A program made the translations under genes and the position numbers. DNA of 64,000 nt from Okamejei kenojei (lineage: Eukaryota), in assembly GCA_035221665.1 (NCBI GenBank), contig CM069147.1:20460001-20524000 (forward strand), given 5' to 3'. Numbering within the stretch: position 1 is the first letter of the stretch; the number at the start of each line of letters is the position of its first letter. Under the pieces are notes generated by a model. That model worked only from the letters and a program-made list of their open reading frames with translations. It was not told the DNA's origin and did no database searches. This document shows, piece after piece, positions 8,716-45,609 of the stretch.

Positions 8716-10895
8716 TGCTGTAGGTTTCTGTATCTGTAGGGCGTGGAATATGAAAAATGCAGGTTCCAGCACTAATGTTGTTGCTTATCCACTTTACATT
8801 TTTTTTTGTCTACATTGCTTACATTTAGCAATGTAAAATGTCACGGAACGATTTGTTACTTGTCTCGATGTAAACGCATTTCCTATTGTTTGAATTTACT
8901 CGAAGCAACTTCTAGCGACGAGTTAGAATTTGGAGTACAGTCATCATAAAGATAGTATGATGACTGTAAGTGGTAATTAGAGGAGACTTTATCTCCTGGC
9001 TCGCTCAACTACAAATGTAGACTTACTAAACTATATGACCTTGAAGAAAATTAAACGTTCTTGATTCCGTTACCATTGTACATCGGTATGTTACTTTTTT
9101 ATCGTTCCTGTTTATTATACCAATGTATCAATTCAAATAAATGATGGGTGTCGCACAGAAATGCTTCAGTTTCGGGATTACTGTGCTGTATGGTATTTTG
9201 CTTTCTGCAAGTAATTGTTAGCAAGCATTGTTACAAGGATGCAGTGATACTGAAGTGAGGCTGAAAAGGAGAAGTAGTGAAAAGCGCAGTGGAAATTATC
9301 ACCCGCATTTTGCCCGGATCTACCGCATTGGTGTGCTCCAGTGACTTTGCAATGCAATGATAAGACAAACTGCTAACTGCCTTTTTTTATGGGTAAGCCA
9401 ATCAATGATCAGGAAAAGTGAAAGCACGAATGTCTACCCAGCAGAGAATAACTTATGATATTGAGTATTGTTGCTGGGAGCATAGCATTTCGTGGTTGAG
9501 AGAGCGCTGGAATGCAATCTTGGTCCTCAGTGAATTATCGTGTAACAAATCCATCTTTGCGATCCATCAGTTGGACACATTTTTAGCAAAGTAGAGGAAG
9601 AAAACAGATCAGGCATTATCTTATTTTGACTGAACATCAGGCTTGAACGACGTATTTCTGCTTTTGATCGCATACATTTTTATTTATATCACTAATGTCT
9701 CTGGATTGCTGACAATGTGTTAGGCAGTTGGTGGACCTCTGCATTGTCAGAGTATATCCCATTGGGTTGCCGATATCCCTTTTCCCCATTGCCCACCGGC
9801 CTTACCTGCTAATCTGCCAACTATGTCCATCTGCTGAACGGCAATAATGCATAATAAACTTCACAATATATTATCACACCAACTTTTTTTGAACTCGTCA
9901 TTATTAATGCAAAAAGAAAGCTTCCCCTGGGTCGCAAGCATACTGGGCAGGTTTCAACCGGTCCATTGAACTGCATATTATGGTTGATGAGCTGAGTTCT
10001 AAGCGCCATATTATTGGCGATTATAGATCTGGACACGAGGCTCTATTGTTCCCCCGCAGCTGTTCCCATTATATGGTGAAAATGGCCTAAAACATATTTG
10101 CTTTAGTGGGTTACACAAAAAGCTGGAGAAACTCAGCGGGTGCAGCAGCATCTAAGGAGCGAAGGCGATAGGTGACGTTTCGGGTCGAGACCTTTAGTGG
10201 GACCAGGGATCCGTCTTCGACGCCCTTCTTCAGCATTCAGCGCAGGCATGGATGAATGAATGGTAAGTACAATACTTTTAAATAAATTAAGTAAATACAA
10301 TGGACAAGTTTATCAATCGATGTTTAATTATGAGAAATGATTCAGAGGTGAGTTATCACAGGTAAAGATTGTGATGTTTCCACAACATTGCACCATCTCT
10401 ATTGTCCCCGGTTGAAAGTTGGCATGAATGAGCAAGAGTAGCTTTTTAATTGGCCGCTTGTGTAATCCTATGTTTGGAAAGGTCTTCTGACAGTGGCGAA
10501 TGTCTGGGCGCTTTTCTGCTGGATAATTGTGGAGATTAAATTAATCGGGTTGTTTAAAGGGATATTTAATATGTTTGTAGACGATTATGGCGCTGAGGAC
10601 TATGAGGAATTGGCACAAAGGGAGAGATGAAGACTGGAACAGATAAGGCACGGTTGCTTTGAATGGCCGTTCACGCGTGAGGGGCCGAATAACATATTGT
10701 TGCTTCTACTTTGTATATTCTTATTTGTATCTGGAATAGACAAATTGCAACAGAGAGCCTGGCTTTCATCGAATTTGAAAATGGTCACTTGTTTTCTACC
10801 CACTAACAATTAATACTCTTAATTCTAGATGCAATAAGTGAAACCTTGGGCCTATACTCCACACATAGTCTACCATCCGAACTGTATTTGGATTG

Positions 10896-11033
10896 TCAGT
10901 TACACGTCTTTTTTGAAGTATTCACATCTGCGTACACCGTGTATTTGTTGTTCTTTTTGAATGCTGATGTTTTCTTTGGGTTGTGATGTTGCACAGTTGC
11001 GTAGGTCAGCTTGTCATGTCCTCTTCCTTTAGT
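10896..11033 (-). CDS. Gene A exon 7, terminal cytoplasmic exon with ITIM and ITSM-like motif
   Basis: Acceptor ttactctcgcag; TKGRGHDKLTYATVQHHNPKKTSAFKKNNKYTVYADVNTSKKTCN*. Confidence 0.85.
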   Translation of the reverse strand, partial: TKGRGHDKLTYATVQHHNPKKTSAFKKNNKYTVYADVNTSKKTCN

Positions 11034-14000
11034 CTGCGAGAGTAATTAATGATCGGCGATTAGGCAATCATTCAGTGACGAATTTGAGCATACTGATTTA
11101 AAATAAAATTTTATGCAACCCATCAGTTGTTATTTTCCCAATAGTATCGATTTGCACAGATTATTTTTTGGCTATACGTTTCTGCTTGATAATGAGTTTA
11201 AACCCGATGAGCCGTTCTTGTCCCACAAAATAATTATTTTATTTTTCTTTTATGTCAACTTCGATGTAATTAAGAAAGTTAGGAGAATTGGTGAATGCTC
11301 AAAATTGTATCCGCAGTACTAAATATTTGGCATAATACGATGCCCCTTTTAAAGTGTATTTGTGGGATTGGCGGGAATCCATTTCGCCTGTAGAGATCAA
11401 GAATTGGTTCGCAGACTGAAGCTACCAGTACCTCTCCAACAGACACCGCGGCTCACGGCTTCATCAGTGGCACCGAAATGCAATAGAATATAAACTGGTA
11501 CTACTTCTTATGGCTCTGCGTCCCCAGGTTTTGACACGAGTCCCCTATTCGGTGGATAATTTGAACGTCTTGTTTACTCTCTTTTCCCAGGTCATTGTCT
11601 GGCATTTGTATTTAGTTTCGCTCTGATTATGAGAACTGGGTAGGTTTGTGTGTTCCTAGCTTGCCACACCTTTGCTTCTTCACATACATTTACATTTTTA
11701 CATTTGAATTTAAACCCGAATAAGGAGACGAAAATTATATTTATGCTCTGATGTGCAGTGGGTGATATGTTTTACTTAAATAAAGATTTGCTATTGTGCA
11801 CTTATATTTTCCCTGCAGTTTGGAAAAACAACTACATTTGGAACAATGCTCATTTCATATCTTAATTGCGCTGTCCAATGGGTTTACCTGTGAAGAGACG
11901 ACATGCTGTTCTTCTTGTAGACCATTTGAAAATCCTTTGTTCTCGCTTAGATTCAGTGTAGCATAGGCAGCGGTATGTTCAATTGGTGCTTGTCTCACCT
12001 ATTAGAAAATTACATTTAATTTTGCGGGTGACCAGGCTTATATAGCTGATAGGGAACTCGAATTGTATCTGGGGCTGAAAATCGATGCACACGGGATATA
12101 GAGGAATAGATTAAACATAGAAACATAGAAACATAGAAATTAGGTGCAGGAGCCAGGCCATTCAGCCCTTCGAGCCTGCACCGTCATTCAATATGATCAT
12201 GGCTGATCATCCAACTGTATCCCGTACCTGTTCTCTCCATACCCTCTGATCCCCTTAGCCACAAGGGCCACATCCAACTCACTCTTAAATATAGCCAATG
12301 AACTGGCCTCAACTACCCTCTGTGGCAGAGAGTTCCAGAGACTCACCACTCTCTGTGTGAAGTCTTTCTCATCTCGGTCTTAAAGGATTTCCCCCCTTAT
12401 CCTTAAGCCTGTGACCCCTTGTGCTGGACTTCCCCAACATCGGGAACAATCTTCCTGTATCTAGCGAATTTTGTAAGTTTCCCCCTCTCAATCTCCTAAA
12501 TTCCAGAGAGTATAAACCGAGTCTTCCAGTCTCAAGACAGTACAAGGAATCAGTCTAGTGAACCTTCTCTGCACTCCCTCTAAATAATGTCCTTCCTCAG
12601 ATTTGGAGACCAAAACTGTACGCAATACTCCCAGGTGTGGTCTCACCAAGACCCTGTACAACTGAAGTAGAACCTCCCTGCTCCTGTAAAATCCTTCCCT
12701 TCTTAAAAAGAGGGGTTACATTTGCTACTCAGGACTACTCTCTCACTAATGCATCCACTATTTCCTGAGCTACTTCCTTAAGTACCTGGGATGCAGCCTA
12801 TCTGGCCCTGGGGATTTATCAATCTATTCAATGTACCCAACACCACTTCCCGACTGACCTGGATTTCACTCAATTCCTCCTTTGACCCACAGTTGCTATT
12901 TCCGGCAGATTATTTATGTCTTCCGTGAAGACATAGTTATTCAATTGGTCGCCATATCCTTGTTCCCCTGATTCACCTGTTTCTGACTTACATTTGTTTT
13001 AACTAACTCTTTCTCTTCACATATCTATAAAAACTTTTGCAGTCAGTTTTTATGTTCCCTGCCAGTTTTCTTATAATCTAATTAACATTTCACTTGCTGT
13101 CAATGATTACCAACGATGTCATCTCAAGGAAGGGGTGGACTATCCTAGCGCCACAATGAAGTTGATTTTTAAACAGCCGCTGAAAACAATCCTCCAAATG
13201 GAAACGTTTCCTCAACTCCTCTCATCTCTTTTTGTCACCGCTCATTTCCAGATTCCTACGCACTTCTATGCTTTCCGCATTGGCGACGCCCAAATTCCTT
13301 TCTCTACTGTAGCCTGACTTATTATTGCATTTAATGGCGGAACCAAAGATTGAAAGTCCTAGGCGATGCCCTCATGGGTTCCAAAAAGATAATGTGATCC
13401 TTAGCATTTCATGTTGCCTGATTTGCCATTGCAGAGTGGAGCTCATAGTCCCTTGTTAACTGGAATAGCAAAAACAGCTAAAAATAGGGACGGAGGTCCA
13501 GGGCCTATGCTGATCTGTTTGTGCTAGTAAATTATTTACAGCATGACTGAAGCTGGTACACTAATTCGTAAAAACACCATAAATCAGCTCAAGTAATGGC
13601 ATGGCATGTAAGGGGAAGGAAATCATAATAATTATTTAACAGCGACTATTTGTGCGTCTAATTAAAATATTGCTCACAATTTTGAGTTGTATACTTCAGG
13701 GAGAATTTCGAACACTGGACGAACTTGTTAAAGCATATTATTATGGAATCAATGATAAGTCACTATGGCCTTGGGAAAGTCAAAGGTAGTTCCATCATAC
13801 CAAATACCATTAAATGTTAATTTAAGAAATCTATTAAAATAAAAGCGTGCACCATATTAAGCATGCAGAAGCTATCACCCACGTTAAAGGAAACAAATAA
13901 TTTAGTTTTAATGTCGTTGCCAGAAAAATCTAGGTGTGGAAATTAAAATATGCACATCCTGGAAATCTGAGGTAAAACCAGAAAACATGCTGAAAATCGC

Positions 14001-17000
14001 AGCTGATCACGTTGTGTAAATAGAAACGCTGACATTTCCAAGCAATTGTAGGAGGGGTATTGAATCTGAAAATTAACTGTTTCTTTTTCCACAAATGCTG
14101 CCCGAACTGTGGTGATTTCCCAGATATTTCTGATTGAATCTCGATGCGAGATGACGACAGATTTATGTTTTAGGCCGCGTATCTGAACCAGCATGAACCA
14201 GCAGGCGAGTGTATTGGCGAACACATTTATCCTATCCTTGTTAGATTCTAATGTTTCTATCTGATTAAATATCGCTCTAATCGAAAAAAAAACATAAACT
14301 AACCAAAGAAATGCAAGGCAGCAGGCCTCGATTGCAACTGTCCAGTGGCTTTGACATTCACCAACACGAACTGATTTTTCCAAGCTCGTGACGGCGAACA
14401 TCACTCCAGCCTCCCGGACGACCTTGAACCATTGCAATTCACTCATCACTGCAACTGCAAAGACGACAGACGCAATCTCCCTGTTACTACAGAATCGTTA
14501 GAAATTTGGATAACACCTACCTGTATATCAGATTCTCGGCTTTCCAAACCATTATTCTAATCAAACTAATCTCCCAACGCCTGGATCAAAGACACAGCAA
14601 ATCGATCTTCAACTCGATCCCCACTTCCTGATCCACAGATTGCAGTCAATAAGTATAAACAACCAAACATCCTCCATGGAAATGCTGAACGTTAGGGCCT
14701 CCACAACACTGCTCTCCCGGCCATTTACTATATTCACTATACATTCACGACTCCGCCGCCAAATTGCGATTTAACTCGATTAACATGTTTGCACATGACA
14801 CCAACATGGTGGAGCAGTTCTCTAACCATGTCTAGACAGAGTTCAGGAAAGGGTAGAGAGTTTAGTGACACTGCATGAGGAAAACAATCTCTCCCTCAAT
14901 GTGAGCAAAACGAAGGAAATAGTTATTTAATTCAGGAAACGAGGTGAAGTACACGACCCAGTCTGCATCAATGGTGTTGATCGAGTTTCCTGGCGATAAA
15001 CATCACCAATGATGTCCAACCACATTCATGCTAACGCCATGAAAGCACGCCAAAGCCTCGAGCTTCCCAGAGGACCAAGGACTGCGGGCTGTCGGCATCA
15101 ACCAGGGAGTGGGGCTTGCAGGCTCGCCGTGCGCAGTGAGCGACGGCAGAGCAGCAGCCCCGACTCTACACCACAGCCTGCAAGGATACTGTGGCTGTCT
15201 AAATTAACCAGGTAGTGGGGCTTGCAGGGCAGCCCCGACTACCCGCAGCCCGCAAGGACTCTGTGGGCTGACGGTTTTACTTACACCGGGCAGGTTGGGC
15301 AGCTCGTTGACCCGATAGGGTCCGGGCTCACACTCGCCGTTCGCAGGCAGTGACGGCAGAGCGGCAGCCCGAATCTACACTGCAACCCGCAGGGTCACCA
15401 CGGGCTGACGGCAACGCTACCCGGAAGTTGGGCAAGCCCGTGGACCAGGCGGGTCCGGGCTCGGAGACTGCCATTCGCGGGCAGCGAAGGTAGAGCACGA
15501 GCTCCGATTCAACGCCGCAGGCCGCAGGTATACCGCGGACTAACGGCTATGCTACTCTATAGAGGTAGTAGACAGAGCCGGGGCCACGACTCTCACACAG
15601 GCGGGAGCCTTGCCGTTAGCGGCAGTCTATGTCCCGCATGAGAGTCTGGTCACCATTGGAGCTGGGGGGGGGGGGGGGGGGGGGGGAGAGAGAGAGAGTG
15701 CGCTCCTCCACCGGAAGCTCATAAAGACCCTCAGGTAATATATTAACCTTGAGTTGTTTAGCTTCTGTAGTAGACTTTGCTTACAGAAACAATGGATGGG
15801 AGACCAGAATGACAGCATCGAAGTATGCCTCCCAGGGCCATGGGACTTCGGATGGGAGTCAGCACCCATTATTCCCGGAACTGCCAGCAACACCGGCAGC
15901 GCCCGCTCTACGGGCCGGGATAAGAACGCGGAAACCGTGGAGCCCAGCGCAGTCAGGACCCGATTCTCCACCACGACTGGCCATGGAGCCGTAAAGTGGT
16001 AGGAGCACCGCGCAGGATCAGGGTAGGCAAGACCCTGACTCCCTACCACTGTCACCTAAGCATAGGGACAGTGGAGCAAAGGTGCGTAAGCGTGTGTTAT
16101 CCGCTTGGCGGCACGTTCTATTTTCCCAACTATGCAGGTCACCAGAGGGAGGACCAGGGGAAGAATCGCACAACAGTTGGTGAAGCCCCACTGTAGGAGC
16201 CGGGGTCGACTTTCCACCGGAGCAGCCACCTGTTCGCGGACCGGTGAAGGATTGAGGCCTGGGTCTGCATGCTCCGCATATGCGGTCGGCACAGACTCAC
16301 CACCGGGGGAGCCTGCCAGATCGCGGGCCGGTGTAGTCTCATCTCGGTCACCGCACCCCCCCTTTAGCGGCAGGACATGACCGAACGTCACCTTTGTCCC
16401 AAAGGAGAACACAGACTCACCACCGTGGGAGCCTGCCAGATTGCAGGCCAGTGTAGTCTCATCTCGGTCACCGCACCCCCCTTCAGCGGCAGGATGTGAC
16501 CGAACGTCGCCTTTGTCCCTAAGTAGGACAGGAGGCAAGCCCGCGCACACATCGGGCTACCACGTTTCGGCGGCCGGGACCGACTCATCACCGCTCATGT
16601 CTTATCAGACTAGTGGGCCGCCTCCGTCCGGAAGACGGCGGGCCAGCGGCAGGTCCGCGCAGGAGTCGCTTAGTCACGCAGAAGCGGCAGGCAGCGAAAT
16701 CCTGTCTAGGCACCCTTGTTATCACCTCGACGAGGTGCGTGGCGATGACAGAAGCCTCAGAGATTCTCCGGAACCTGCGGAAGTCAACTTGTCGTCCACA
16801 GATGCAGCGGCGGTCGCATGGCTCAGATGGAGCGCATGATGGAGCGTATCCTAGAGCACAAACTCTGCAGGTGGACCAGATGTCCTCCAGTCCTGGAGAC
16901 ATGCGGCAGGGCCACCCAGCATGTCCTGTCATTGGTGGGGAATGCCACGGATCAGCAGCTGGCTGACACGGAAGTAGGGTGGAGCAGGAACCTGTAGTAC

Positions 17001-20000
17001 CTGAGAAAACCCAGGAGGAGCTGCTGAAAGTGGTCTCCAAGTTCGCCCAGCCGAAGCACACAGGTCAGCCTTTTGCAGCCCAAATTAGGGGCTAGCATAG
17101 ACTACCTCACCACACCAGCTACAGGAACAGGTCCTTACCAAGGCGATCAACAAATACAAGGCCCAAACAACTGCAAATTGTTGAATGTACCGACAGTCAA
17201 CATGCCCATCTGGGGCAACAACAGTCCCGGGATAAGGGCACAGGATCTGAAGTTACAAAAGATCCTGAAATTGCTGACGTCGGTGATTACTGCCTTTGCC
17301 AGGTCGGTTGAAGGTATGGAAATGATGGCAGAGCAGGAGGATGCTTTTGTGATATTAGTCATGAAGTTAACGTTTACCAAAATATCGCCATTTAACCGAC
17401 TCCTAAACCTCATATTTTGTGGGGTTGTACAAGGCATCTGTGATGCCACCATCGAGACAGCTGTTCGGTGAGGACCTGCCCATACAGGTCAAGGACCTGG
17501 ATTAGGAGGTGGAGGCAGTTGGGTTGATAACCCACCTCCCTCCAGCAGGCCGGCAGTGCACAGGCAAACATCATATGCAAGACCTCGGGCCACCTGAAAG
17601 ACCAGTAAGGACCTACACATCAGCAGTACCTCAACACAATTCAACGGAACACCAGGAACCAGAACGACAGGCCCGCCGGTAGCCATGGAGGTAGGGGGTC
17701 TGGTTCTCTAGGAAGTGCTGCATGTATAACCTCATAAGTAGGAGAGAGGTTACATACATTCTGGGATACATGGGTGTGATTATCACTATCCCAGGGAACA
17801 AAGCAATAGACATTATAGAGGCATGTAACAGCCTTGCTTGCGCCAGGAAACCGACTATTAGACATGCTGCTAAGGTAATTGGTAAACTTGTAGCTACATA
17901 CTAGCTACATAATTGGGCCATTACAATATCAAAACTTGCAAAGAGCAAAATCTTGGCATTTTTTACGGGCCTATGCAGCCGCCAATCAAGGTCACAAGTA
18001 GTGGATAGCAATGTATTTTAACATTATTACATAAAACCATTAGTTTTGTTACAGACCGACGCAAGCACCAAGGGCTAACGAAATGCACACAAGTGGATGT
18101 TGAATCAATCCAAATATTTCCTAAAATGGTAGCCTAATATGCTAAAATGGTAGCCTAATATGGAACACCAGATATCGACCTCCTTGCATCCAGGTTGAAC
18201 CATTAGATATCATATGTGTCTCTTGAGAACCAGATCCTGGGGCAGTGGCGATGGATGAGTTCTGGCTACATTGGGGGAAATGGATTTCTATGCTTTCCCC
18301 ATTCTGCTTCATCAGTCAGGTGTTGCAGAAAATGCAACCAGGTTCTGCAACATAAAGGACCATGGACGTCATACGGCATTGTGCAGAGAGAGTCCACTAG
18401 GACGCAGTACCTCACCTACATAAGGATATGGGAGGTTCCTGTAGTTGGACCAAGACCACCTACATATCTGCTACGATCTCCAATGTGCTGGCATCCTCAC
18501 GGGTCGTCATATAATGAGTCCCTCAGTTATAGTACCATATACAGTGCCAGGAGTGCACTGTCATCCTACCTTGACATTGGAGTGGGATCTCACCAGCTGG
18601 TATCCAAACTATGAGGGATATGTTCTATCCATCCCTCCCCGACCACGATATTATATTACCTGAGATATAAGGGTAGTGTTGACCCGACTCAGGAGCTGGT
18701 CGCCTATGACGGACTTACCACTGGACCTACTCACCTTTAAATTGGTGATGGTAATGGCACTGAACACAGCACAATGGGTCCAGACTCTACAGGAATTAAA
18801 CCTGGATAGAATGATCGACCCATAATAAAGTAATTTCTTTATAAAAGAGTTGCTTAAACTACACAGACCTGCGACTACAGGTCTGAAAATGGCCATCAGG
18901 AATATGGAGGCGGATCTGTTATCAGCCAATGGAAACCCACGTCACAGGGTGATGATGCAGACTATCTCCAGATGGCTCAATGTGGTATTCGGTGCAGCAG
19001 GTAAGACACTAACCATTTAAAAATGTCATTCTACCAGGGCTGCATCCACATCAGCGGTGAGGACCATGGAGGTGTTCATGGATCATGTCCTCACAATAGC
19101 GGGCTGGGCCAGTGAAACTACATTTCAGCGATTTCATAACTAACCTGTGGCCACTCCCGAAACGTCTGCGGAGTCAGTTTTAAGTGCTGTTCCCTAAACG
19201 TTTGTCCCTGAGTTCAGGAGTTTATTGTTGTATTAACAATAATGTTATTATTTTTCAGCTTGTTCAAGTCTGAAATACGTTAACATACTTCCTCCATCAG
19301 TATTACGGCAGTGTGTGGGCATGGACGTGATCCAGGGCATGTAATCACAGAGCTTTGAAATCTTCACAAAGTCACTCACGTGACTCTGAAATGAAATAGT
19401 AAGATTAAACGAGAACTTACCAGTTTGAAGTTTGATCTTTATTTTATGAGGAGTTGTGATGAGGGATTTCGTGACCTCCGCTCCCAACCCTGTACTATAA
19501 GGTCAGCTGGTAAATGGAGTCTCTTCAATCTTACTATATTAGTTCATTTCTGGGTAGTTCTGTGATTCCACATCGCTGCTTTGAAGAAATTCGCGCATGC
19601 GTGCCTGGCGGGGTCTTCTTCACGAAATCCCTCATCGCAACTCCTCATAAAATAAAGATCAAACTTCAAACTGGTAAGTTCTCGTTTAATCTTACTATTT
19701 TGTGGGAAGCAGTTTAGATGCCATTGTAGGTCATATCCGGTTATATGACCCTTCGTTAAGGATTGAAGCGAAAACTGTAATTAACACGTTAAAGAACGGC
19801 TCAACAAAGCAAAGTAAATTCTCGACAAAGGTTCTTTTAATTTTAATTACCGTGCTTTGAAATTCAATATAACTTTTGCCTTACTCGTCAGCAACCCACA
19901 ATCTCTTCGTAGTGTGATATTTGATAGTTCTCACTATCTAAGATTTATTTTTAAGTGTTCCTGCCACCAGAACTAATAACAGGTCATATTTTCATCCTAA

Positions 20001-22982
20001 ACATCACCTTTCACTTTAGAATATAATAGGTTATGATCTGGCATGGAATTGTCAAAAGACGTTGAAGCCGATACAACAGGAATATTCAAATTATTATTGG
20101 ATGTATACTTGACGTAACCTGAAAAAGAAATCATGTTTTCATCCTGCCCTAGAGTATTCCACGATATTATGGAATAAATCCGATTTATAATATTTCTGCT
20201 ACGAATAATCCCTATTTTGAAACAAGAGGAGACATTTCACCTACCGGCTCCCTGTTCTGACGTATTCCTACAGAGGTTACGTTATGGCCTAGAGGAATGA
20301 AATAAAAATTAAATAAAACAACTTGAATTGTAAAGATTGATCTGTAGATTTTGACATTATTCTTCTCATATTAATCAAATTTACTGCAGAAAGTAAGAAC
20401 GATTGCATTTTTAAATATCCGATGGCGCACAACAGCACCAATTGTCACAAACTAGCATGCAACGCATCTTATACTCTTTCGCGATGTTGCGCCCACTGGA
20501 ATTAAATTTTAACTGACACTTTAAAATTTGGATGGTTTATAAGGAACCGTGTCCATGTCAAAACAGCAATGTAATATAAACATATGGAGATGATTGATTT
20601 CGCTTATTGCCACAAAGCCACAGTTGTTTTTTCTTCAAAATCGTAATCTTCCATTGCATTAATTATCCATCGCACTGGATGTTTGAAGAATTCCTTAATT
20701 TGAAAATATATGCATAGGTGATAATTGAATTAATCAAATTCCAATCTGAAATAATTCAATTTGAAGATCCATCTTATATTATCACAGATATATATCAAAA
20801 CCGCTTCAGAAATCTCTTTACCTGTCCATCTAAGTTATCTTTACTCCTCTGTGAGCAAACACCATTGACATATCCATTCTCATTTTAACCATATAAATGA
20901 TTATTATAAATTATCAAGATACTTACCGTACCATATCTTTAAACTGAGTCTTATCACGATTATAATCAGAACTAAAATTACCGATCCACCTACTGCGTAT
21001 ACGATAATCTGTTTGCGATCAATTCCTGGTGGATCAACAGAAAATTAAGAAACTGTAAAGAATTTATACATTTTAGAACAAATATACAAACGGTAGTCAA
21101 CAAAGTAAATCATTTCGTAGGTGCATTTTAATACCCACATCCGAAAGTTTGAAAGGTATATCAGAAGGCACCAGATGGAAGTTAGTAATGGAGTCCACAG
21201 GACAAACAAATGCAATTGTATTGTGCCCATGTGCGGAGAGCTGCTTACTAACGTTAAACGGAATTTAGGCTGAATCTTCATATATTTCACCAGACAGCGG
21301 ATATATGCATATGCCAGGACGTTTTTTTTCTCATTACAAACACTATATTAATTCAGTTGGTCAATACATCTCACACGGATTTCCTTACGAGAACCGATGA
21401 AGCACAACAGATTTCACAGAGCATGCAAGTGTTGCTTTCAAGCGAATAAATGCGAGTCACGTTTACCCCTTCCCTCCGTGTACGGAAAGCTGTCCAGTTA
21501 TTAATCTGATCGAATTTGATCGACCGCCCCAATATCATGTGTAACTGGCTCCAGTCTTACCTTGGCCCAGGGTGTAACTGAAACTGGCCGCCACCTTCAG
21601 GGAGATATGTGACACCAGACAGGTGTAAATATCTTTGCCCTCGCCAGGCTGCGTTATTTCCAAAAAACTAGAAGCCACAAACAATCCTTCTCCGCTCCGT
21701 CTTTTCACAGTTTCGATTCCAGTGCGAATTTCCTCGTTATTTCTTAGCCAGAATATTTCTACTTTCTCCGGATAAAAGTCGTCCGTCTTGCACACAAGTG
21801 TCCGTGGAGAGCCATGTCCTTCAGCAGGAACAATTTTCAAGGGAGTTGGGGGATCTTAATTTAAAAAAAAACATTTCTCGGGTGTTCGCTTTCCATTTTA
21901 TTGTAAATATTTACATTTTATCTCGCCACCGAGTCGTATTTCCCACGATCAAATTATTTAATATTTAAACTTCCCAGTTTGTCGTTAATTTATCGCGCCT
22001 TTCATAGCGGACAGCCGGACGAATTCCGCCAAGATACAAAGCGGGTGAATTTAAGGAGTGCCAACAGAATTTAAGGAGTTCCAAAATAAACTCTGTTCTG
22101 AATGGACGTTCCCCGGTATCGCGCCAAAGTGTTTGCCAGAAGCTTATTTATAAGTGGCCATATTCGGATCATTCATATATTGCAAAAAAATTGAGCCATG
22201 ATAATCGAAATATAACAGATTTGCATAGTGTGGTGACATGAAGCGGTTATACATGAAGATTAATGATTAATCTCGTTAGCTCTTTAAGTAGTATATGAAC
22301 TAAATCTCCTCAACCTGGTCAAAAAGACCCATTTCAAAATTTAATCACTATACTCCGACCTGCCTCGAGCTAACCAATTATGAGGTGTTTGCGCAGTAAT
22401 CAACCAGAACCAGAACCAGAACCAAATATGGGTTTGAACTGCCGATCACAACCATTTACCAGCACGTGAACCAAAGGCTGGGACATATTTCTCGCGCATT
22501 GAATGCTAATATTGAAACATTGTGGAATCTATTACAAGCAATCTACGAGCGCACTTATTCAATATCAGTGTGTAGGAAAGAACTGCAGATGCTGGTTTAA
22601 ACCGAACATATGCTGGAGTAACTCAACGGGCGTACAGGCAACTTTCTCTTCGGAGGAAGGAATGGGTGACGTTTCTAATCGAGGTTTGAAGAAGGGTCTC
22701 GACCCCAAACGCCACTCATTCCTTCTACCCAGAGATGCTGCCTGCCCCGCTGAGTTACTCCAGCATTTCGTGTCTCTATACAAATCAGTTCCATCTGTTG
22801 TGCCAACTTGGCAACAGTGAATCGACAACGCTAGATCGGCGTTAATGATGATAGCTTGCAGAAGCCAAATGAGGGAAAAGAACAAGCTCTGTTTCTCGCT
22901 GTGCAGATTCTATTCATTTAGGTCCTATATTTCGTATTAACGCGAACTCCTTCCGTTCGAGCTGCAGTCGGTGCCTAACTGA

Positions 22983-23018
<36 letters not shown>

Positions 23019-24445
23019 CGGTTGTTGGGTTGCTTTGTCAGTTTATTACAAGCAATTCATTTAGAAAGTTTGACTTAATTTACTTAATCAGGATTATCTT
23101 TAACGATGAAATAAATCTTACTGTTTATTCCCGGACTTTAAGCAGTTTCAGTTGAGATGTTGTTTACTTCTTTTTTTCCCCCTACGGTGCCAAATTGGTG
23201 GGACAGACTGAAGTTGTGCATTAGAAAATTAGTGTCAAACGTTTTCAAAACAAACAAAAAAATATTACATTGAAGTCAGCTTGGAGTCAGCAGCCATGAG
23301 ACCCACATGTTGGAACACCAAGGTCCTTGGGTTTCAGCTGCACATTGGTCTTCTGAGGTTCTAAAGCTGTCGATGTCGAATGGCAGACTCTACGATCGAC
23401 CTATTAAAATTGTTCCTGCTCTCTTTTCTTAGTGATGAGAAACCTGGACATCACACTCCAGCCATTCAAACTAACAGGAATATTATTTCAATATCGCATT
23501 GCAAAACATTTCTAACCACACCTCAGGATGAATTCCTTCCATCTTAGCACTTACCCGTTCTTAGCGATAAATCCATCTGGGAGATTGGCTTAAAATTCGC
23601 GACCGCTAAATGAATGGGCTCCAATGAAAAGGAGTATCGCAAATTCTCGTACAATGAACAGAATAACCCTCAATACCCACGCGTCCCACAAGTGCTACTC
23701 GACCTGGTGATTATATACATTGTGCTTTGTTTCATTTCGAATTACCAGTCCCTGTAATGCATTTATTTAAAATTGTTATTACCGGGTATTTATCAACAGG
23801 CGATTTTTCATATTATCCTCGCGACTTGGTTTTACTTTACAAATGACATAGAACTGAAATTTGCTTATGTCCCTAACACACACACTCACCAAATACAGTG
23901 ACCTGGCTGCCACTTCCATTCCCGATAACCCGATGCTGGAAATTTACTTGACAGTAATACAGACCGGAGTCAGCGACACGCGCATGTTGGAGAGTAAATG
24001 TTCCGCTTCCCGAATCTTTCGTAAATTGTTTTCTACTGTCCGATTCCAGGAATGTCTTCATGCCGCCCTTCCACCAATAAACGTCAATAGTGTCTTTCGA
24101 TATTGGAAATTTGCAATACATTATAGCAGTTTCTCCGCCGCCAACGTCCAAGTTGATAGGGAATTGAGACACTCTGCTCGAAGAGACTTCGGCGGCTGTC
24201 GGGAAAAAAAACAAGAACAATGGAAACAGTTGTACACGCTGGACAGAGAAAAGAAGAACCAACTGCCGAAAAGCACGAAACAATTATAAACCCACGAGGG
24301 CCTAATAGATAAACCTAATAGCTCGAAACCAGGTCCGAATTTTCGAAAAATAATACTTAAACCAGAAATGGCACACATATTTAACTATACCCTGCGTAAG
24401 TATAACCAGAAGAGCCATGGACCAAACTGTAACATTCGCCGACAT
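10896..24445 (-). CDS. Gene A: non-rearranging antigen-receptor-like IgSF receptor, L-VJ-C1-TM-cytoplasmic ITIM/ITSM, 348 aa, 7 coding exons
   Basis: Exons 24445-24391, 24195-23890, 21854-21561, 21025-20927, 20288-20245, 11998-11888, 11033-10896; all GT-AG; phases 1,1,1,1,0,0 join into one open frame of 1047 nt including the stop. Confidence 0.85.
11888..11998 (-). CDS. Gene A exon 6, cytoplasmic, with YxxL motif
   Basis: attttctaatag|...CAG|gtaaac; 111 nt, phase 0-0; VRQAPIEHTAAYATLNLSENKGFSNGLQEEQHVVSSQ. Confidence 0.8.
12115..13080 (-). mobile_element. CR1 LINE 3' fragment with many internal deletions
   Basis: (aacataga)n tail at 12114-12140; matches the reverse complement of CR1 ~30300-32180 with many gaps. 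Confidence 0.85.
14330..15074 (+). mobile_element. Degraded Rex/Babar RT fragment
   Basis: Similar to 62740-63150 (ttccaaaccattattc..aaactaatc; acttcctgatccacag; aaagcacgccaaagcctc). Confidence 0.55.
15075..19701 (+). mobile_element. DIRS1-like tyrosine-recombinase retrotransposon, 5'-truncated and degenerate, in gene A intron 5
   Basis: Remnants VIGKLVA, DIDLLASRLN, ARSALSSYL, HSTRAAS, GWAS; internal complementary region ~19360-19475 is the reverse complement of the right end 19617-19701; left terminal repeat absent. Confidence 0.9.
16290..16519. repeat. Two tandem ~120 bp units in the DIRS 5' region (further degenerate GC-rich repeats at 15075-15600)
   Basis: cacagactcaccaccg..ggagcctgccagat...cctttgtccc at 16290 and 16410. 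Confidence 0.85.
20245..20288 (-). CDS. Gene A exon 5, juxtamembrane cytoplasmic
   Basis: tttcattcctctag|...CCG|gtaggt; 44 nt, phase 1-0, bridges the TM exon to exon 6; (G)HNVTSVGIRQNREP. Confidence 0.7.
20927..21025 (-). CDS. Gene A exon 4, transmembrane
   Basis: ctgttgatccaccag|...|gtaagt; 99 nt; GIDRKQIIVYAVGGSVILVLIIIVIRLSLKIWY; homologous to gene B TM exon. Confidence 0.9.
21561..21854 (-). CDS. Gene A exon 3, C1-set Ig domain
   Basis: LVCKTDDFYPEKVEIFW...YTCLVSHISL, canonical C1 motifs; 294 nt, phase 1-1, donor gtaaga. Confidence 0.95.
22568..22800. mobile_element. Inverted pair of Penelope-type terminal repeats forming an imperfect palindrome
   Basis: 22570-22680 is a minus-strand copy and 22685-22795 a plus-strand copy of the repeat seen at 27866-27992. 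Confidence 0.6.
23890..24195 (-). CDS. Gene A exon 2, germline-joined VJ-type V domain
   Basis: ttttttcccgacag|...|gtgagt; 306 nt; B-strand C, VYWW, DSGLYYC and J-like G strand IGNGSGSQVTV in one exon. Confidence 0.95.
24391..24445 (-). CDS. Gene A exon 1, signal peptide
   Basis: ATG at 24445; MSANVTVWSMALLVILTQ; 55 nt, phase 1; same length and position as gene B leader. Confidence 0.85.
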
Positions 24446-26572: not shown

Positions 26573-27133
26573 AAACTGGAATTTAGATGTAGACTGAAAA
26601 TGCAAATGCACCAAATGCATACCCCCGACTGTCATCAATCGCGACATTATGCCAGTCCATCTGCATTCTCCTTGTCCATTCGAGCGGTTCCAAAATCTAT
26701 GAACCTCATAGTTAATGCCAGCAGGTTACCTCTAGTTACAGGCGATATCCTCTTTTTTGTCAATAGAATCATCGCAACTTGTCAAACGTTGTATGGAGTA
26801 CGTACTAAGCGCACCCACATAGGTCAGGTGCACAGGGGTAGTCTTTCCAATAACCCTCACGGATATTTTTCCGCTCCTCTATGCCGGAGAGGCACCACAC
26901 GTCTCTGCTCTTCTGAGCAAGAGTGACAACGCGTCAACCATTGTGATATTTTTGAATCATTTAGTTTCATCTTGACTTATAACGCGTCAGGTAATGGCAC
27001 GTCGTTCCATGCTCACAGAGAAAGAGTATCATTTAAAAATCGGCCATTTAATTGTCATGAAGATGTTTGCCTCGTATTTAATTTTTCCCCCAGAACGAAC
27101 ACGAAATAATGAAGGAAAGAACCATAAAGAAGG

Positions 27134-27225
27134 AAAGAAGGGTTTCGACCCGAAACGTCACCCATTCCTTCTCCCCAGAGACGCTACCTGTTCCGCTGTG
27201 TTACTCCAGCATTTTGTGTCTACCT
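27134..27225 (+). mobile_element. Penelope-type terminal repeat fragment
   Basis: aagaagggtttcgacccgaaacgtcacccattccttct...ttactccagcattttgtgtct. Confidence 0.6.
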
Positions 27226-27329
27226 ACGAAATAATGAAGACTACAGTACAACCTTAGAAATGTTTCATTGACGTAGGCAGACCTTTAAGAAATGGTCTTA
27301 AATTAAACTTATAGTTCTACACGAAGTGA

Positions 27330-28109: not shown

Positions 28110-31100
28110 CAAGTGAGTTGATTTAATTTGGGGGCAAGCCATGTCATTTGAGATCGGCCCCATGGTTTTCTCATCCTGCAACATGTGGGAGATCAGCGAT
28201 ATGGTCGGTGTCCCTGGTGACTACGTTTGCAGGAAGTGTGTCCAGCTGCAGCTCCTGACAGACCGCATTAAACGATTGGAGCTGCGGTTGGATTCATACT
28301 GGAGCATCCACGATGCTGAGAAGCTCGTGAATAGCACGTACAGTGAGTTGGTCACACCGCAGGTTAAGTGGACAGAAAGGGAACGGGTGGCCATTAGCCA
28401 GCGTAGCACTAGGCAAGTGGTGCAGGAGTCCCCTGCGGTCATCTCCCTCCTAAACAGATTTACCATTTTGCATACTGTTGGGGGAGATGGCTCATCAGGG
28501 AAGGCAGCAGCAGCCAAGTCCATGGCACCATGGGTGGCTCTGCACCACAGGAGGGGAGAAAGAAGAGTGGAAGGGCTATTGTAATAGGGGATTCAATAGT
28601 AAGGGGAATAGATAGGCGTTTCTGTAGCCGCAAACGAGACTCCATGATGGTATGTTGCCTCCCTGGTGCAAGGGTCAGGGATGTCACTGAACGGCTGCAG
28701 AACATTCTGGAGGGGGATGGTGAACAGCCAGCTGTCGTGGTGCACATTGGCACCAACAATATAGGTAAAAAACGGGATGAGGTCCTACAAGGCGAATTTA
28801 GGGAGCTAGGAGATAAACTTAAAAGTAGGACCTCAAAGGTAATAATCTCTGGAATCCTACCAGTGCCACGTGCTAGTCAGAGTAGAAATAGGAGGAAATT
28901 GCAGATTAATACGTGGCTTGAAAAATGGTGCAAGGGGGAGGGGATTCAAATTTCTCGGGCATTGGAACCAGTTCTGGGGAAGGTGGGACCAGTACAAACA
29001 GGACGATCTGCACCTCGGCTTGAAGGGAACCAATGTCCTTGGGGGAGTGTTTGCTAGTGCTGTCAGGGTGGATTTAAACTAATGTGGCAGGGGGATGGGA
29101 GCATGAGCAGAGAGACAGAGAGATGTAAAATGAGGGTAGAAGCAATAGGTAGCAAGGTGAAAAGTAAAAGTGGCAGGCAGAAAAATCCAGGGCAAAAATC
29201 AAAAAGGGCCACTTTTCACCATAATTGTATAAGGGGTAAGAGTGTTGTAAAAACAAGCCTGAAGGGTTTGTGTCTCAATGCAAGGAGCATTCATAATAAG
29301 GTGGATGAGTTGAATGTGCAGATAGTTATTAATGAATATGATATAGTTGGGATCACGGAGACATGGCTCCAGGGTGACCAAGGCTGGGAGCTGAACATCC
29401 AAGGATATTCAATATTCAGGAGGGATAGTCAGAAAGGAAAAGGAGGTGGAGGAGCGCTGCTGGTTAGAGAGGAGATTGACGCAATAGAAAGGAAGGACAT
29501 TAGCTTGGAGGATTTGGAATCGATATGGGTAGTGCTGCAAAACACTAAGGGGCAGAAAACGCTGGTGGGTGTTGTGTACAGGCCACCTAACAGTAGTAGT
29601 GGAGTTGGGGATGGCATCAAACATGAAATTAGAAATGCGTGCAACAAAGGTAAAACAGTTATAACGGGTGACTTCAATCTACATATAGATTGGGTGAATC
29701 AAATTGGCAGGGGTGCTGAGGAAGAGGATTTCTTGGAATGTATGCAGGATAGTTTTCTAAACCAACATGTAGAGGAACCAACGAGAGAGCAGGCTATTCT
29801 ATACTGGGTACTGAGTAATGAGGAAGGGTTAATTAGCACTCTTGTTGTGCATGGCCCCTTGGACACCAGTGACCATAATATGGTTGAGATCTTCATTAGG
29901 ATGGAGAGTGACATTGTTAATTCAGAAACAAGGGTTCTGAACATAAAGAAAGGTAACTTTGAGGGTATGAGACGTGAATTGGCCAAGATAGACTGGCAAG
30001 TGATTCTTAAAGGGTTGGCGGTGGATATGCAATAGAAGTCATTTAAAGACTGCATGGATGAACTACAACAATTGTTCATCCCAGATTGGCAAAAGAATAA
30101 ATCAGGGAAGGTAGTGCATCCGTGGATAACAAGGGAAATCAGGGATAGTATCAAAACTAAAGATGAAGCATACAAATTAGCCAGAAAAAGCAGCCTACCA
30201 GAGGACTGGGAGAAATTTAGAGACCAACAGAGGAGGACAAAGGGCTTAATTAGGAAAGGGAAAATAAATTATGAAAGAAACCTGGCAGGGAAAATAAAAA
30301 CGGACTGCAAAAGTTTTTATAGATATATGAAGAGAAAAAGGTTAGTTAAAATAAATGTAGGCCCCTTGCAGTCAGAAACAGGTGAATTGATCATGGGGAA
30401 CAAGGACATGGCAGACCAATTGAATGACTACATTGGTTCTGTCTTCACTAAGGAAGACATAAATAATCTGCCGGAAATAGCAGGGGACCGGGGTTCAAAT
30501 GAGATGGAGGAACTGAGTGAAATCCAGGTTAGCCGGGAAGTGGTGTTAGGTAAATTGAACGGATTGAAGGCCGACAAAATCCCCAGGTCCAGATAGGCTG
30601 CATCCCAGAGTACTTAAAGAAGTAGCCCCGGAAATAGTGGATGCATTAGTGATAATTTTTCCAAACTCTTTAGATTCTGGAGTAGTTCCTGAGGATTGGA
30701 GGGTAGCTAATGTAACGCCACTTTTTAAAAAGGGAGGGAGAGAGAACACGGGGAATTACAGACCAGTTAGTCTAACATCGGTAGTGGGGAAATTGCTAGA
30801 GTCAGTTATCAAAAATGGGATAGCAGCACATTTGGAAAGTGGTGAAATCATTGGACAAAGTCAGCATGGGTTTATGAAAGGTAAATCATGTCTGACGAAT
30901 CTTATAGAATTTTTCGAGGATGTAACTAGTAGAGAGGATAAGGGAGAACCTGTGAATCTGGACTTGTATCTGGACTTTCAGAAGGCTTTTGACAAGGTCC
31001 CACATAAGAGATTAGCATTCAAACTTAAAGCAGATGGTATTGGGGGTTCAGTGTTGATGTGGATAGAGAACTGGCTGGCAGACAGAAAGCAAAGAGTAGG

Positions 31101-32181
31101 AGTAAACGGGTCATTTTCAGAATGGCAGGCATTGACTAGTGGGGTACCGCAATGCTCAGTGCTGGGACCCCAGCTATTAACAATATATATTAATGATCTG
31201 GATGAGGGAATTGAATGCAACATCTCCAAGTTTGCGGATGACACGAAGCTGGGGGGCAGTGTTAGCTATGAGGAGGATGCTAGGAGGCCGCAAGGTGACT
31301 TGGATAGGTTGGTTGAGTGGGCAAATGCATGGCAGATGCAGTATATTGTGGATATATGTGAGGTTATCCACTTTGGCGGCAAAAACAGGAGGGTAGACTA
31401 TTATCTGAATGGTAGCCGATTAGGGAAGAGGGAGATGCAACGAGACCTGGGTGTCATGGTACACCAGTCATTGAAAGTAGGCATGCAGGTGCAGCAGGCT
31501 GTGAAGAAAGCGAATGGTATGTTAGCATTCATAGCAAAAGGATTTGAGTACAAGAGCAGGGAGGTTCTACTGCAGTTGTACAGGGTCTTGGTGAGGCCAC
31601 ACCTGGAGTATTGCATACAGTTTTGGTCTCCTAATCTGAGGAAAGACATTTTTTCCATAGAGGGAGTACAGAGAAGGTTCACCAGACTGATTCCTGGGAT
31701 GGCACGACTTCCATATGAAGAAAGACTGGATAGACTGGGCTTGTACTAGCTGGAATTTAGGAGATTGAGGGGGGATCTTATAGAGACGTACAAAATTCTT
31801 AAGGGGTTGGACAGGCTAGATGCAGGAAGATTGTTCCCGATGTTGGGGAACTCCAGAACAAGGGGTCACAGTTTAAGGAGAAGGGGGAAGTCTTTTAGGA
31901 CCGAGATGAGAAGATCATTTTTCACACAGAGAGTGGTGAGTCTGTGGAATTCTCTGCCACAGAAGGTAGTTGAGGCCAGTTCATTGGCTATATTTAAGAG
32001 GGAGTTAGATGTGGCCCTTGTGGCTAAAGGGATCAGGGGGTATGGAGAGAAGGCAGGTATAGGACACTGAGTTGGATGATCAGCCATGATCATATTGAAT
32101 CATGATTTCAACCTTAAAGTGCAGCCTTAAAGGGCCGAATGGCCTACTCCTGCACCTATTTTCTATGATTCTATGATTCTA
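28110..32181 (+). mobile_element. Near full-length CR1 LINE (ORF1 zinc finger plus SGNH esterase; ORF2 APE plus RT), inactivated
   Basis: ORF1 CRKC, IGDSIVRG, HIGTNN; ORF2 LNARSI, GITETW, GDFN, SDHN, FADD; frameshifts and stops; (ttctatga)n tail. Confidence 0.95.
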
Positions 32182-45510: not shown

Positions 45511-45609
45511 CATTTTGTGCCTTTACTTGGAGTCTTATCAAGATAATGGCCAAAACTAAAATTGCCAAGACACCCACTGCGCATCCGATAATTAGATTTT
45601 TATCTGCGT
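45511..45609 (-). CDS. Gene B exon 4, transmembrane
   Basis: tttctcttgatccataag|...|gtgaga; DADKNLIIGCAVGVLAILVLAIILIRLQVKAQN. Confidence 0.9.

What the first reader, a model, noticed from the sequence alone, without database searches (positions are those of the whole stretch)
10896..11998. Hidden inhibitory tail: YxxL + ITIM + ITSM, 8-9 kb beyond the TM exon
Seen: two small exons absent from the ORF track encode AAYATL, LTYATV (matches I/V/L/SxYxxL/V) and TVYADV (matches TxYxxV/I). A 44-nt exon joins them in frame across a DIRS-expanded intron. Known: ITIM followed by ITSM is the SHP-1/SHP-2-recruiting layout of PD-1, CD33-related Siglecs and SIRPalpha-type receptors. Inference: gene A couples a TCR/Ig-like V-C1 ectodomain directly to inhibitory signalling instead of a CD3/CD79-type adaptor.
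Basis: partly seen in the sequence, partly recalled or inferred. Interest (0 to 1): 0.8.

Follow-up and report, generated by a model that had tools for sequence, protein, structure and literature searches.

The report
SIRP-like receptor's distant inhibitory tail exons
The two small exons are real: they are the last coding exons of an intact ray- or skate-like immune receptor gene and give it an inhibitory tail like that of mammalian SIRP-alpha, a layout already annotated in other rays, sharks and chimaeras, so this is a good gene-model catch and not a new kind of receptor.

Summary
Observation confirmed. On the minus strand, exons 11998-11888 and 11033-10896 have AG/GT borders. They read in frame from the TM exon through the 44-nt exon and encode AAYATL, LTYATV (ITIM) and TVYADV (ITSM), then a stop.

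- **Homology:** a 45-aa query of the last exon against 1.84 billion proteins found two hits, both Mobula family members. One is a 346-aa V-C1-TM protein (XP_062923465.1, "SIRP-alpha-like"). It matches every exon of gene A in order: V, C1, TM, 44-nt exon, tail 1, tail 2.
- **Conservation:** the tail motifs recur in rays, sharks and chimaera. The ancestral layout has four tyrosines in two pairs 23 residues apart, like SIRP-alpha. Gene A has lost the second one (Tyr to Ser).
- **Gene model:** gene A is an intact 7-exon, 348-codon gene with an uncharged TM.

Not shown: transcription or splicing in this species, because the only runs available were genomic DNA of ~95% relatives. SHP-1/2 binding is also untested, and the "DIRS" label for the 8.2-kb intron has no Pfam support.

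The scan's earlier notes report the same family on other DNA of this genome (s1-880316, s1-880059, s1-880192). Verdict: new member of a known, automatically annotated but uncharacterised kind; modest interest.

The parts
24391..24445 (-). Leader exon of gene A (ATG 24445-24443; 55 nt; ends in phase 1; donor GTATAG at 24390)
   Evidence: Read. It encodes MSANVTVWSMALLVILTQ, comparable to the MSGKFTVSYMALLATTW... leader of P0002.
23890..24195 (-). V(J) exon, 306 nt, phase 1 to 1, with the J-like strand IGNGSGSQVTVF in the same exon (not split)
   Evidence: Pfam V-set 3e-8. 53% identical to P0002 residues 21-120. Borders read.
21561..21854 (-). C1-set exon, 294 nt, phase 1 to 1
   Evidence: Pfam C1-set 7e-15. 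PDB best hits are Ig constant and MHC class II beta-2 domains. 64% identical to P0002 residues 126-219. The junction motif PPTPL is shared with P0002.
20927..21025 (-). Transmembrane exon, 99 nt, phase 1 to 1; TM core IIVYAVGGSVILVLIIIVI has no charged residue
   Evidence: 52% identical to P0002 residues 220-248.
20245..20288 (-). 44-nt juxtamembrane exon (G)HNVTSVGIRQNREP, phase 1 to 0
   Evidence: AG/GT borders. Translation. It aligns with ISTSSLDRCQNEEP of P0002 in the family alignment.
11999..20244 (-). Intron 5, 8,246 nt, repeat-rich: GC-rich insert at about 14-18 kb, a 120-nt tandem duplication, an 81-nt inverted repeat
   Evidence: No Pfam transposon domain found. No further V, C1, TM or tail-like exon inside.
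11888..11998 (-). Tail exon 1, 111 nt, phase 0 to 0. Carries Tyr 1 (AAYATL); Ser 35 (VVSSQ) stands where relatives have Tyr 2 (IIYSQ)
   Evidence: 49-54% identical to P0002 and P0005 at residues 269-303 and 271-305. Alignment.
10896..11033 (-). Tail exon 2, last coding exon. ITIM LTYATV and ITSM TVYADV lie 23 residues apart; stop TGA at 10898-10896
   Evidence: phmmer E 1e-4 in 1.84e9 proteins. 60% identical to P0002 residues 304-345. Only such motif pair in the window.

Best explanation
Exons 11998-11888 and 11033-10896 are the true last two coding exons of gene A. Gene A is an intact seven-exon gene (leader, V(J), C1, TM, 44-nt exon, tail 1, tail 2; 348 codons) of a ray- or skate-like cartilaginous fish. 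It belongs to a chondrichthyan family of non-rearranging V-C1 surface receptors that NCBI names inconsistently, most often 'SIRP-alpha-like'.

The tail is a SIRP-alpha-type tail. The ancestral layout is two pairs of tyrosines, each pair about 23 residues apart. Gene A keeps Tyr 1 (YATL), has lost Tyr 2 (Ser) and keeps the C-terminal pair as a canonical ITIM (LTYATV) and ITSM (TVYADV).

Inferred mechanism: on ligand binding, Src-family kinases phosphorylate the C-terminal pair. The tandem SH2 domains of SHP-1/SHP-2 then dock on it and dampen activation. Signalling would be direct, because the TM is uncharged.

Shown: exon anatomy, reading frame, homology, motif conservation. Inferred: transcription and splicing in this species, phosphorylation, phosphatase recruitment, ligand.
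For: - Splice borders and frames.
- The last exon alone retrieves only two proteins out of 1.84e9, both family members. One of them, XP_062923465.1 of Mobula hypostoma, is colinear with every exon: V 21-120, C1 126-219, TM 220-248, 44-nt exon 253-266, tail 1 267-303, tail 2 304-345.
- KLTYA(A/T)(L/V) and xxY(A/S)x(V/L/I) are present in all 14 tail-bearing proteins from rays, sharks and chimaera. Their spacing of 23 residues holds in every member except one, Heterodontus P0025, where it is 21.
- Identity in the tail (49-60%) equals that of the ectodomain (53-64%), so the tail has been under similar constraint.
- Uncharged TM.
- SIRP-alpha motifs ITYADLNL...TEYASIQT and LTYADL are printed in PMC5589908 and PMC5413580. 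By eye they match AYATLNL...(I/V)(I/V)YSQT and LTYATV.
- The language-model atlas puts P0002 nearest to SIRP-alpha clusters (0.97 and 0.96).
- The motif pair is unique in the window.
Against: - No RNA evidence. The runs that hold the stretch are contiguous genomic contigs of ~95% identical relatives, not transcripts.
- The penultimate intron is 8.2 kb of repeats, which could favour premature termination.
- A possible alternative acceptor at 20850/20849 would give an in-frame stop two codons after the TM exon.
- In the relatives, the part of the last exon whose differences were listed has 2 non-synonymous and 1 synonymous change. That is no clear sign of purifying selection at this short distance.
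- The NCBI relatives are computed models whose transcript support I could not inspect.
- No tetrapod SIRPA sequence was compared by a tool.
Confidence: 0.85

Rival explanations
1. The tail exons are intact-looking relics. Since the repeat insertions enlarged the intron, gene A is expressed mainly or only as a short-tailed form that ends soon after the TM exon, so it no longer signals through ITIMs.
For: - The 8,246-nt repeat-filled intron.
- A candidate acceptor at 20850/20849, 77 nt downstream of the TM exon, would read G|AG GAG TAA and stop.
- Many family members are naturally short-tailed.
- Neighbouring gene B has no recognisable tail exons in the window.
- Tyr 2 is already lost.
Against: - Both tail exons keep open frames and AG/GT borders.
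- The ITIM and ITSM residues are unchanged, at 49-60% identity to ray proteins, the same level as the ectodomain.
- No differences from the ~95% relatives lie in 10896-10954, the ITSM end.
- Introns of 8 kb are ordinary in such genomes.
Confidence: 0.1
2. The two exons belong to another, partly deleted gene copy downstream of gene A. They would be the orphan 3' end of a lost paralog, not spliced to gene A.
For: - The family is clustered and riddled with transposons.
- Gene B has lost its tail in this window.
- 8.2 kb separate the 44-nt exon from tail exon 1.
Against: - No other V, C1, TM or 44-nt-like exon lies between 20245 and 11998.
- Strand, order and reading phase fit gene A exactly.
- Without these exons gene A would end in an open phase after the 44-nt exon.
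Confidence: 0.04
3. Chance open frames that happen to contain tyrosine motifs.
For: ITIM-like strings are common: 329 in the six-frame translation of the window.
Against: - Database-wide hits only to tails of the matching receptor family.
- Colinearity of six successive exons with P0002.
- Only one ITIM-ITSM pair in 127,996 codons.
Confidence: 0.01

Closest known systems
SIRP-alpha (SHPS-1, PTPNS1), the mammalian inhibitory signal-regulatory protein
   Same: - N-terminal V domain followed by a C1-set domain, single-pass uncharged TM, and a cytoplasmic tail with paired tyrosine motifs.
- Motifs ITYADLNL...TEYASIQT and LTYADL resemble AYATLNL...(I/V)(I/V)YSQT, KLTYA(A/T)(L/V) and xxYAxV of this family.
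- Pair spacing is 23-24 residues.
- The family has tail-less members and members with a charged TM, like SIRP-beta and SIRP-gamma.
- P0002's nearest atlas clusters are SIRP-alpha, and PDB 2wng is hit at 1.8e-13.
   Different: - One C1 domain instead of two in gene A and the ray proteins. Shark P0022 and chimaera P0028 do have two C1 matches.
- Tyr 2 is lost in gene A.
- The last motif is an ITSM (TVYADV).
- Orthology to tetrapod SIRPA, CD47 binding and SHP recruitment are untested.
- By ectodomain sequence alone the family is no closer to SIRP than to Ig constant regions or UrIg2.
Annotated chondrichthyan V-C1 'SIRP-alpha-like / NCR3LG1-like / TCR-beta-like' models (e.g. XP_062923465.1 Mobula hypostoma, P0005 Hypanus sabinus, P0025 Heterodontus, P0028/P0030 Callorhinchus)
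   Same: Same domain order, same exon-sized blocks, and the same tail with conserved KLTYA and C-terminal xxYAxV motifs.
   Different: - Only about 50-64% identical, so gene A is from a more distant batoid and is a paralog or ortholog of uncertain rank.
- Gene A has Ser at Tyr 2 and ends ...KKTCN.
- I found no paper on this family in the library searched.
[quoted passage not shown] 2019, cited in PMC10751288)
   Same: As I recall the abstract, and as PMC10751288 cites it: non-rearranging VJ genes, V-C1 in fish, amphibians and reptiles, with a potential ITIM.
   Different: The paper and its sequences are not held here, so no comparison was possible. PRARP was not reported from cartilaginous fish, as far as I recall.
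UrIg / UrIg2, non-rearranging shark antigen-receptor-like genes
   Same: Germline-joined VJ exon followed by C1-type domains. PDB 9dmx (UrIg2) is hit by P0002 at 3.4e-14.
   Different: UrIg and UrIg2 have many C domains and are antibody-like dimers. The paper describing them mentions no ITIM or ITSM.
PD-1 and CD33-related Siglecs (ITIM followed by ITSM)
   Same: Membrane-proximal ITIM followed by a distal ITSM about 20-25 residues later.
   Different: Those ectodomains lack C1-set domains (general knowledge). No sequence relation beyond the motifs appeared in any search here. Siglec clusters appear only lower in the atlas list.

Membership tests
Chondrichthyan V-C1 SIRP-alpha-like receptor family (NCBI models such as XP_062923465.1) | Colinear leader, V(J), C1, TM, juxtamembrane block and two-block tyrosine tail | tested here: met
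   Each window exon matches successive residues of P0002: 21-120, 126-219, 220-248, 253-266, 267-303, 304-345.
Chondrichthyan V-C1 SIRP-alpha-like receptor family (NCBI models such as XP_062923465.1) | Conserved KLTYAxL/V ITIM and C-terminal xxY(A/S)x(V/L/I), 23 residues apart in all but one member | tested here: met
   Gene A has DKLTYATV and YTVYADV, 23 residues apart.
SIRP family (SIRP-alpha type) | N-terminal V-set domain | tested here: met
   Pfam V-set 3e-8, although I-set scores equally. PDB best hits are I-set domains.
SIRP family (SIRP-alpha type) | Two membrane-proximal C1-set domains (V-C1-C1) | tested here: not met
   Only one C1 exon lies between V and TM in gene A. Shark P0022 and chimaera P0028 show two C1 matches.
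SIRP family (SIRP-alpha type) | Four cytoplasmic tyrosines in two pairs forming ITIMs | tested here: inconclusive
   The family has four, with 23-residue pair spacing. Gene A has three, with Ser at Tyr 2. The comparison with the SIRP-alpha motifs was by eye only.
SIRP family (SIRP-alpha type) | Orthology to tetrapod SIRPA by phylogeny or synteny | not tested
SIRP family (SIRP-alpha type) | Binds CD47 and recruits SHP-1/SHP-2 when phosphorylated | not testable with these tools
   Needs binding and pull-down experiments.
PRARP | Sequence relation to chicken, fish or amphibian PRARP genes | not testable with these tools
   No PRARP sequence or paper is held.
Rearranging antigen receptor chains (TCR, Ig) | V and J split by recombination signals | tested here: not met
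   The J-like strand IGNGSGSQVTVF lies in the same exon as V.
Rearranging antigen receptor chains (TCR, Ig) | Charged or polar TM residues for CD3/CD79 assembly and a short tail | tested here: not met
   The TM core is uncharged. The tail, counted after the TM core, is about 106 residues and carries tyrosine motifs.
PD-1 / CD33-related Siglec type ITIM-ITSM receptors | Homologous ectodomain (V only, or V plus C2 with a sialic-acid-binding Arg) | tested here: not met
   The membrane-proximal domain is C1-set. Only the motif order is shared.

The most novel reading that the evidence does not exclude
The single-C1, germline-joined V(J)-C1 receptors of cartilaginous fish, with a SIRP-alpha-type four-tyrosine tail, may be the sister or ancestral form of the SIRP family, and perhaps of PRARP. 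That would tie SIRPs directly to the non-rearranging precursors of antigen receptors. In this genome they would sit in a transposon-riddled cluster where inhibitory members are being turned into tail-less ones: gene B has lost its tail and gene A has lost Tyr 2.
Probability: 0.2. Interest if true: 0.55.

Novelty: new member of a known kind. Interest (0 to 1): 0.3.

Why it matters
The practical gain is a correct gene model. Without the two exons, 8-9 kb beyond the TM exon, gene A would be read as a tail-less, possibly activating receptor. With them it is an inhibitory one.

More broadly, cartilaginous fish have a sizeable family of V-C1 receptors with a SIRP-alpha-like tail. It sits under contradictory automatic names (SIRP-alpha-like, B7-H6-like, TCR-beta-like, Ig-lambda-like, MHC class II-like), and the searches here turned up no dedicated study of it. 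Such genes bear on two old ideas:
- that SIRPs descend from an antigen-receptor precursor (PMC2785349);
- that paired inhibitory and activating receptors evolved early.

For a specialist this is a useful data point, not a surprise.

Tried and rejected
1. **RNA evidence.** The one run search found no RNA holder. The one read-laying run showed that X1-X6 are contiguous genomic contigs of ~95% identical relatives, so no junction could be tested. Its table of differences was cut at position 10971, so most of the last exon and all of tail exon 1 could not be compared.
3. **Reaching bony-vertebrate relatives through the tail.** Searches from P0002 250-346 and P0028 395-489 found only ray or chimaera proteins. 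This is no evidence of absence, because the tool needs shared 5-residue words.
4. **Atlas search with the tail alone.** Uninformative.
5. **DIRS identity of the intron.** None of the 17 listed intron ORFs of 70 aa or more gave a Pfam reverse transcriptase, RNase H or recombinase hit.
6. **UrIg/UrIg2 as the family.** Rejected: those have many C domains and no ITIM is described for them.
7. **PRARP paper.** Not held.
8. **Tail exons for gene B.** None found in the window by blastn or tblastn.
9. **Rfam scan.** Nothing.

I built no joined coding sequence or protein of gene A. Exon lengths were summed instead.
Full report
**What is there**

Read on the minus strand, the stretch holds two short exons.
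- The first, 11998-11888 (111 nt), follows an AG and is followed by GTAAAC. It translates to VRQAPIEHTAAYATLNLSENKGFSNGLQEEQHVVSSQ.
- The second, 11033-10896, follows CTCGCAG. It translates to TKGRGHDKLTYATVQHHNPKKTSAFKKNNKYTVYADVNTSKKTCN and a stop.
- LTYATV fits the ITIM consensus (S/I/V/L)xYxx(I/V/L) and TVYADV fits the ITSM consensus TxYxx(V/I). AAYATL is only a YxxL, because Ala at position -2 is not canonical.

**Gene model**

Upstream on the same strand lie the other exons of gene A:

| Exon | Coordinates | Evidence |
|---|---|---|
| Leader | 24445-24391 | MSANVTVWSMALLVILTQ |
| V, with a J-like strand in the same exon | 24195-23890 | Pfam V-set 3e-8 |
| C1-set | 21854-21561 | Pfam C1-set 7e-15 |
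| Transmembrane | 21025-20927 | IIVYAVGGSVILVLIIIVI, no charged residue |
| 44-nt exon | 20288-20245 | |
| Tail 1 | 11998-11888 | |
| Tail 2 | 11033-10896 | |

- The six introns have phases 1, 1, 1, 1, 0 and 0, so the frame runs unbroken to the stop at 10898-10896.
- The exon lengths sum to 1,047 nt, that is 348 codons plus the stop.

**Is it more than chance?**

- In the six-frame translation of the whole window (127,996 codons) there are 329 ITIM-like and 30 ITSM-like strings. Only one stop-free ITIM is followed 15-35 residues later by an ITSM, and that is this exon.
- The 45 residues of the last exon, scored against 1.84 billion representative proteins, gave only two hits at E about 1e-4. 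Both are Mobula proteins of one family.
- One of them, XP_062923465.1 (346 aa, 'tyrosine-protein phosphatase non-receptor type substrate 1-like', i.e. SIRP-alpha-like), is colinear with every exon of gene A. V matches residues 21-120, C1 126-219, TM 220-248, the 44-nt exon 253-266, tail 1 267-303 and tail 2 304-345.
- Even the junction residues agree: TVF-x-PPTPL between V and C1, and ...EP followed by xxQAxxEHT between the 44-nt exon and tail 1.

**The family**

- A word search with that protein found 34 relatives in rays (Mobula, Hypanus, Hemitrygon, Pristis), sharks (Chiloscyllium, Heterodontus, Heptranchias, Scyliorhinus) and the chimaera Callorhinchus.
- Their automatic names contradict each other: SIRP-alpha-like, NCR3 ligand 1-like, TCR beta-like, Ig lambda-like, MHC class II-like, PD-L1-like, tapasin-related.
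- Aligning the tails shows four tyrosines as the ancestral layout:
  - Tyr 1, xxYAxL;
  - Tyr 2, (I/V)(I/V)YSQT or TVYAQT, 23 residues later;
  - Tyr 3, KLTYA(A/T)(L/V);
  - Tyr 4, xxY(A/S)x(V/L/I), 23 residues after Tyr 3 in every member but one (21 in Heterodontus P0025).
- Tyr 3 and Tyr 4 are present in all 14 tail-bearing proteins.
- Gene A keeps Tyr 1, 3 and 4 but has Ser (TCT) where the relatives that keep this block have Tyr 2 (His in the two Heterodontus models P0032 and P0034).
- Some relatives skip the 111-nt block (P0006, P0031), which fits a phase 0-0 cassette exon.
- Other members have short tails, and some of these carry a charged residue in the TM (K, D, E or R). So the family contains inhibitory and putatively activating forms.

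**What it resembles**

- SIRP-alpha is a V-C1-C1 receptor whose ITIMs recruit SHP-1 and SHP-2 (PMC12975943). Its C1 domains prompted the idea that it is related to an antigen-receptor precursor (PMC2785349).
- Its printed motifs are DITYADLNLPKGKK...HTEYASIQTS (PMC5589908) and ITYADL, LTYADL and TEYASI (PMC5413580).
- By eye these line up with AYATLNLSENKG...(I/V)(I/V)YSQT and KLTYATV, with pair spacing of 24 versus 23 residues.
- The language-model atlas places the Mobula protein nearest to two SIRP-alpha clusters (0.97 and 0.96).
- By ectodomain sequence alone the family is about equally close to Ig constant regions, UrIg2 and SIRP-alpha/gamma. The C1 exon is a typical C1-set domain.
- The V exon's best solved matches are I-set domains such as Robo and contactin, ahead of antibody light-chain V domains. 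'TCR/Ig-like V' is therefore an overstatement.
- Gene A has one C1 domain, so it fails one defining feature of SIRPs. I file it as SIRP-like, not as a SIRP. Shark and chimaera members with two C1 matches narrow that gap.
- PRARP, a non-rearranging V-C1 family with an ITIM cited in PMC10751288, may be related. Neither its paper nor its sequences are held.
- UrIg and UrIg2 differ: they have many C domains and no ITIM is described for them.

**How it most likely works (inferred)**

- The uncharged TM and the long tail argue for direct signalling without an adaptor.
- The intact ITIM-ITSM pair, 23 residues apart, is the kind of doubly phosphorylated unit that engages the two SH2 domains of SHP-1 or SHP-2.
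- The first pair is disabled by the Tyr 2 loss, so Tyr 1 is left as a lone YxxL.
- None of this was or could be tested here.

**What is missing**

- There is no transcript evidence. The only runs holding the stretch are genomic contigs of relatives about 95% identical, running straight through the intron.
- In the part of the last exon whose differences were listed (10896-10971) they show two amino-acid changes (K27Q, F25S) and one silent change. None touches a motif, and none lies in 10896-10954. The adjacent 3' UTR (10802-10878) has 11 differences. This is weakly suggestive at best.
- The 8,246-nt intron is repeat-rich: a GC-rich insert, a 120-nt duplication and an 81-nt inverted repeat, and a very high-copy repeat starting near 12106.
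- I could not confirm that it is a DIRS element.
- A candidate acceptor at 20850/20849 would give a stop two codons after the TM exon. A short isoform is therefore possible and is the main rival reading.

**Verdict**

The signalling claim is reasonable but inferred.
- The design is not new. It is the SIRP-alpha design, already present in automatic annotations of many cartilaginous fish.
- This scan's earlier notes report the same family on other DNA of this genome (s1-880316, s1-880059, s1-880192). I confirmed the family's range only within cartilaginous fish, not their claims about bony vertebrates.
- New member of a known kind; interest about 0.3.

Noticed in passing
window 45530-52394 (minus strand): Paralogous gene B: V exon at about 52371-52048 (50% aa identity to A), C1 46149-45862 (59%), TM exon at about 45604-45510 ending in phase 1 before GTGAGA. 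No tail-like or 44-nt-like exon was found between it and gene A by blastn or tblastn, so B is tail-less or has its tail outside the window.
   Followed up: partly
window 11896-11894 (minus strand, codon 35 of tail exon 1): Gene A has Ser (TCT) where the family members that keep this block have the second tail tyrosine (IIYSQ / TVYAQ), apart from His in two Heterodontus models. One base separates TCT from TAT. Whether the ~95% relatives share this could not be seen.
   Followed up: partly
window 20848-20822 (minus strand): A short segment with a CAG acceptor (AG at 20850-20849) and a GTAAAG donor, 77 nt after the TM exon. Spliced to the TM exon it would read Glu-Glu-stop, a possible short-tailed isoform. 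Purely sequence-based.
   Followed up: no
window 12106-12150: Summed contig depth jumps from about 10-130 to 1.6-16.8 million in four genomic runs of relatives. An extremely high-copy repeat therefore starts about 100 nt upstream of tail exon 1.
   Followed up: no
window 10120-10245 (minus strand): SINE-like element in or just beyond the 3' UTR. From memory, not tested, its core (...GGTCTCGACCCGAAACGTCACC...GCTGAGTTTCTCCAGC) is of the kind abundant in skate and shark genomes. Related translated fragments recur elsewhere in the window (e.g. ORFs at 22503-22820 and 26994-27257).
   Followed up: no
window 19394-19474 and 19620-19700: 81-nt inverted repeat, 99% complementary, arms 145 nt apart, inside intron 5. 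Possibly a small foldback or MITE-like element.
   Followed up: no
window 16290-16530: About 120-nt unit duplicated in tandem (87-94% identity) inside the GC-rich (52-55%) insert of intron 5. No protein domain was recognised in the surrounding ORFs.
   Followed up: partly
window 28141-31749, 38064-40342, 61649-63079: LINE-type retrotransposon ORFs (endonuclease plus reverse transcriptase; RVT_1 up to 3e-39). Apart from genes A and B, the ORFs I scanned revealed only transposon-type domains.
   Followed up: partly
window 23920-23906 (minus strand): The J-like strand reads IGNGSGSQVTVF (FGNGSGTKLTVF in Mobula). It is a FGxGTxLxV-like motif interrupted by an NGS glycosylation sequon that is conserved in the rays examined and in gene B.
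   Followed up: partly
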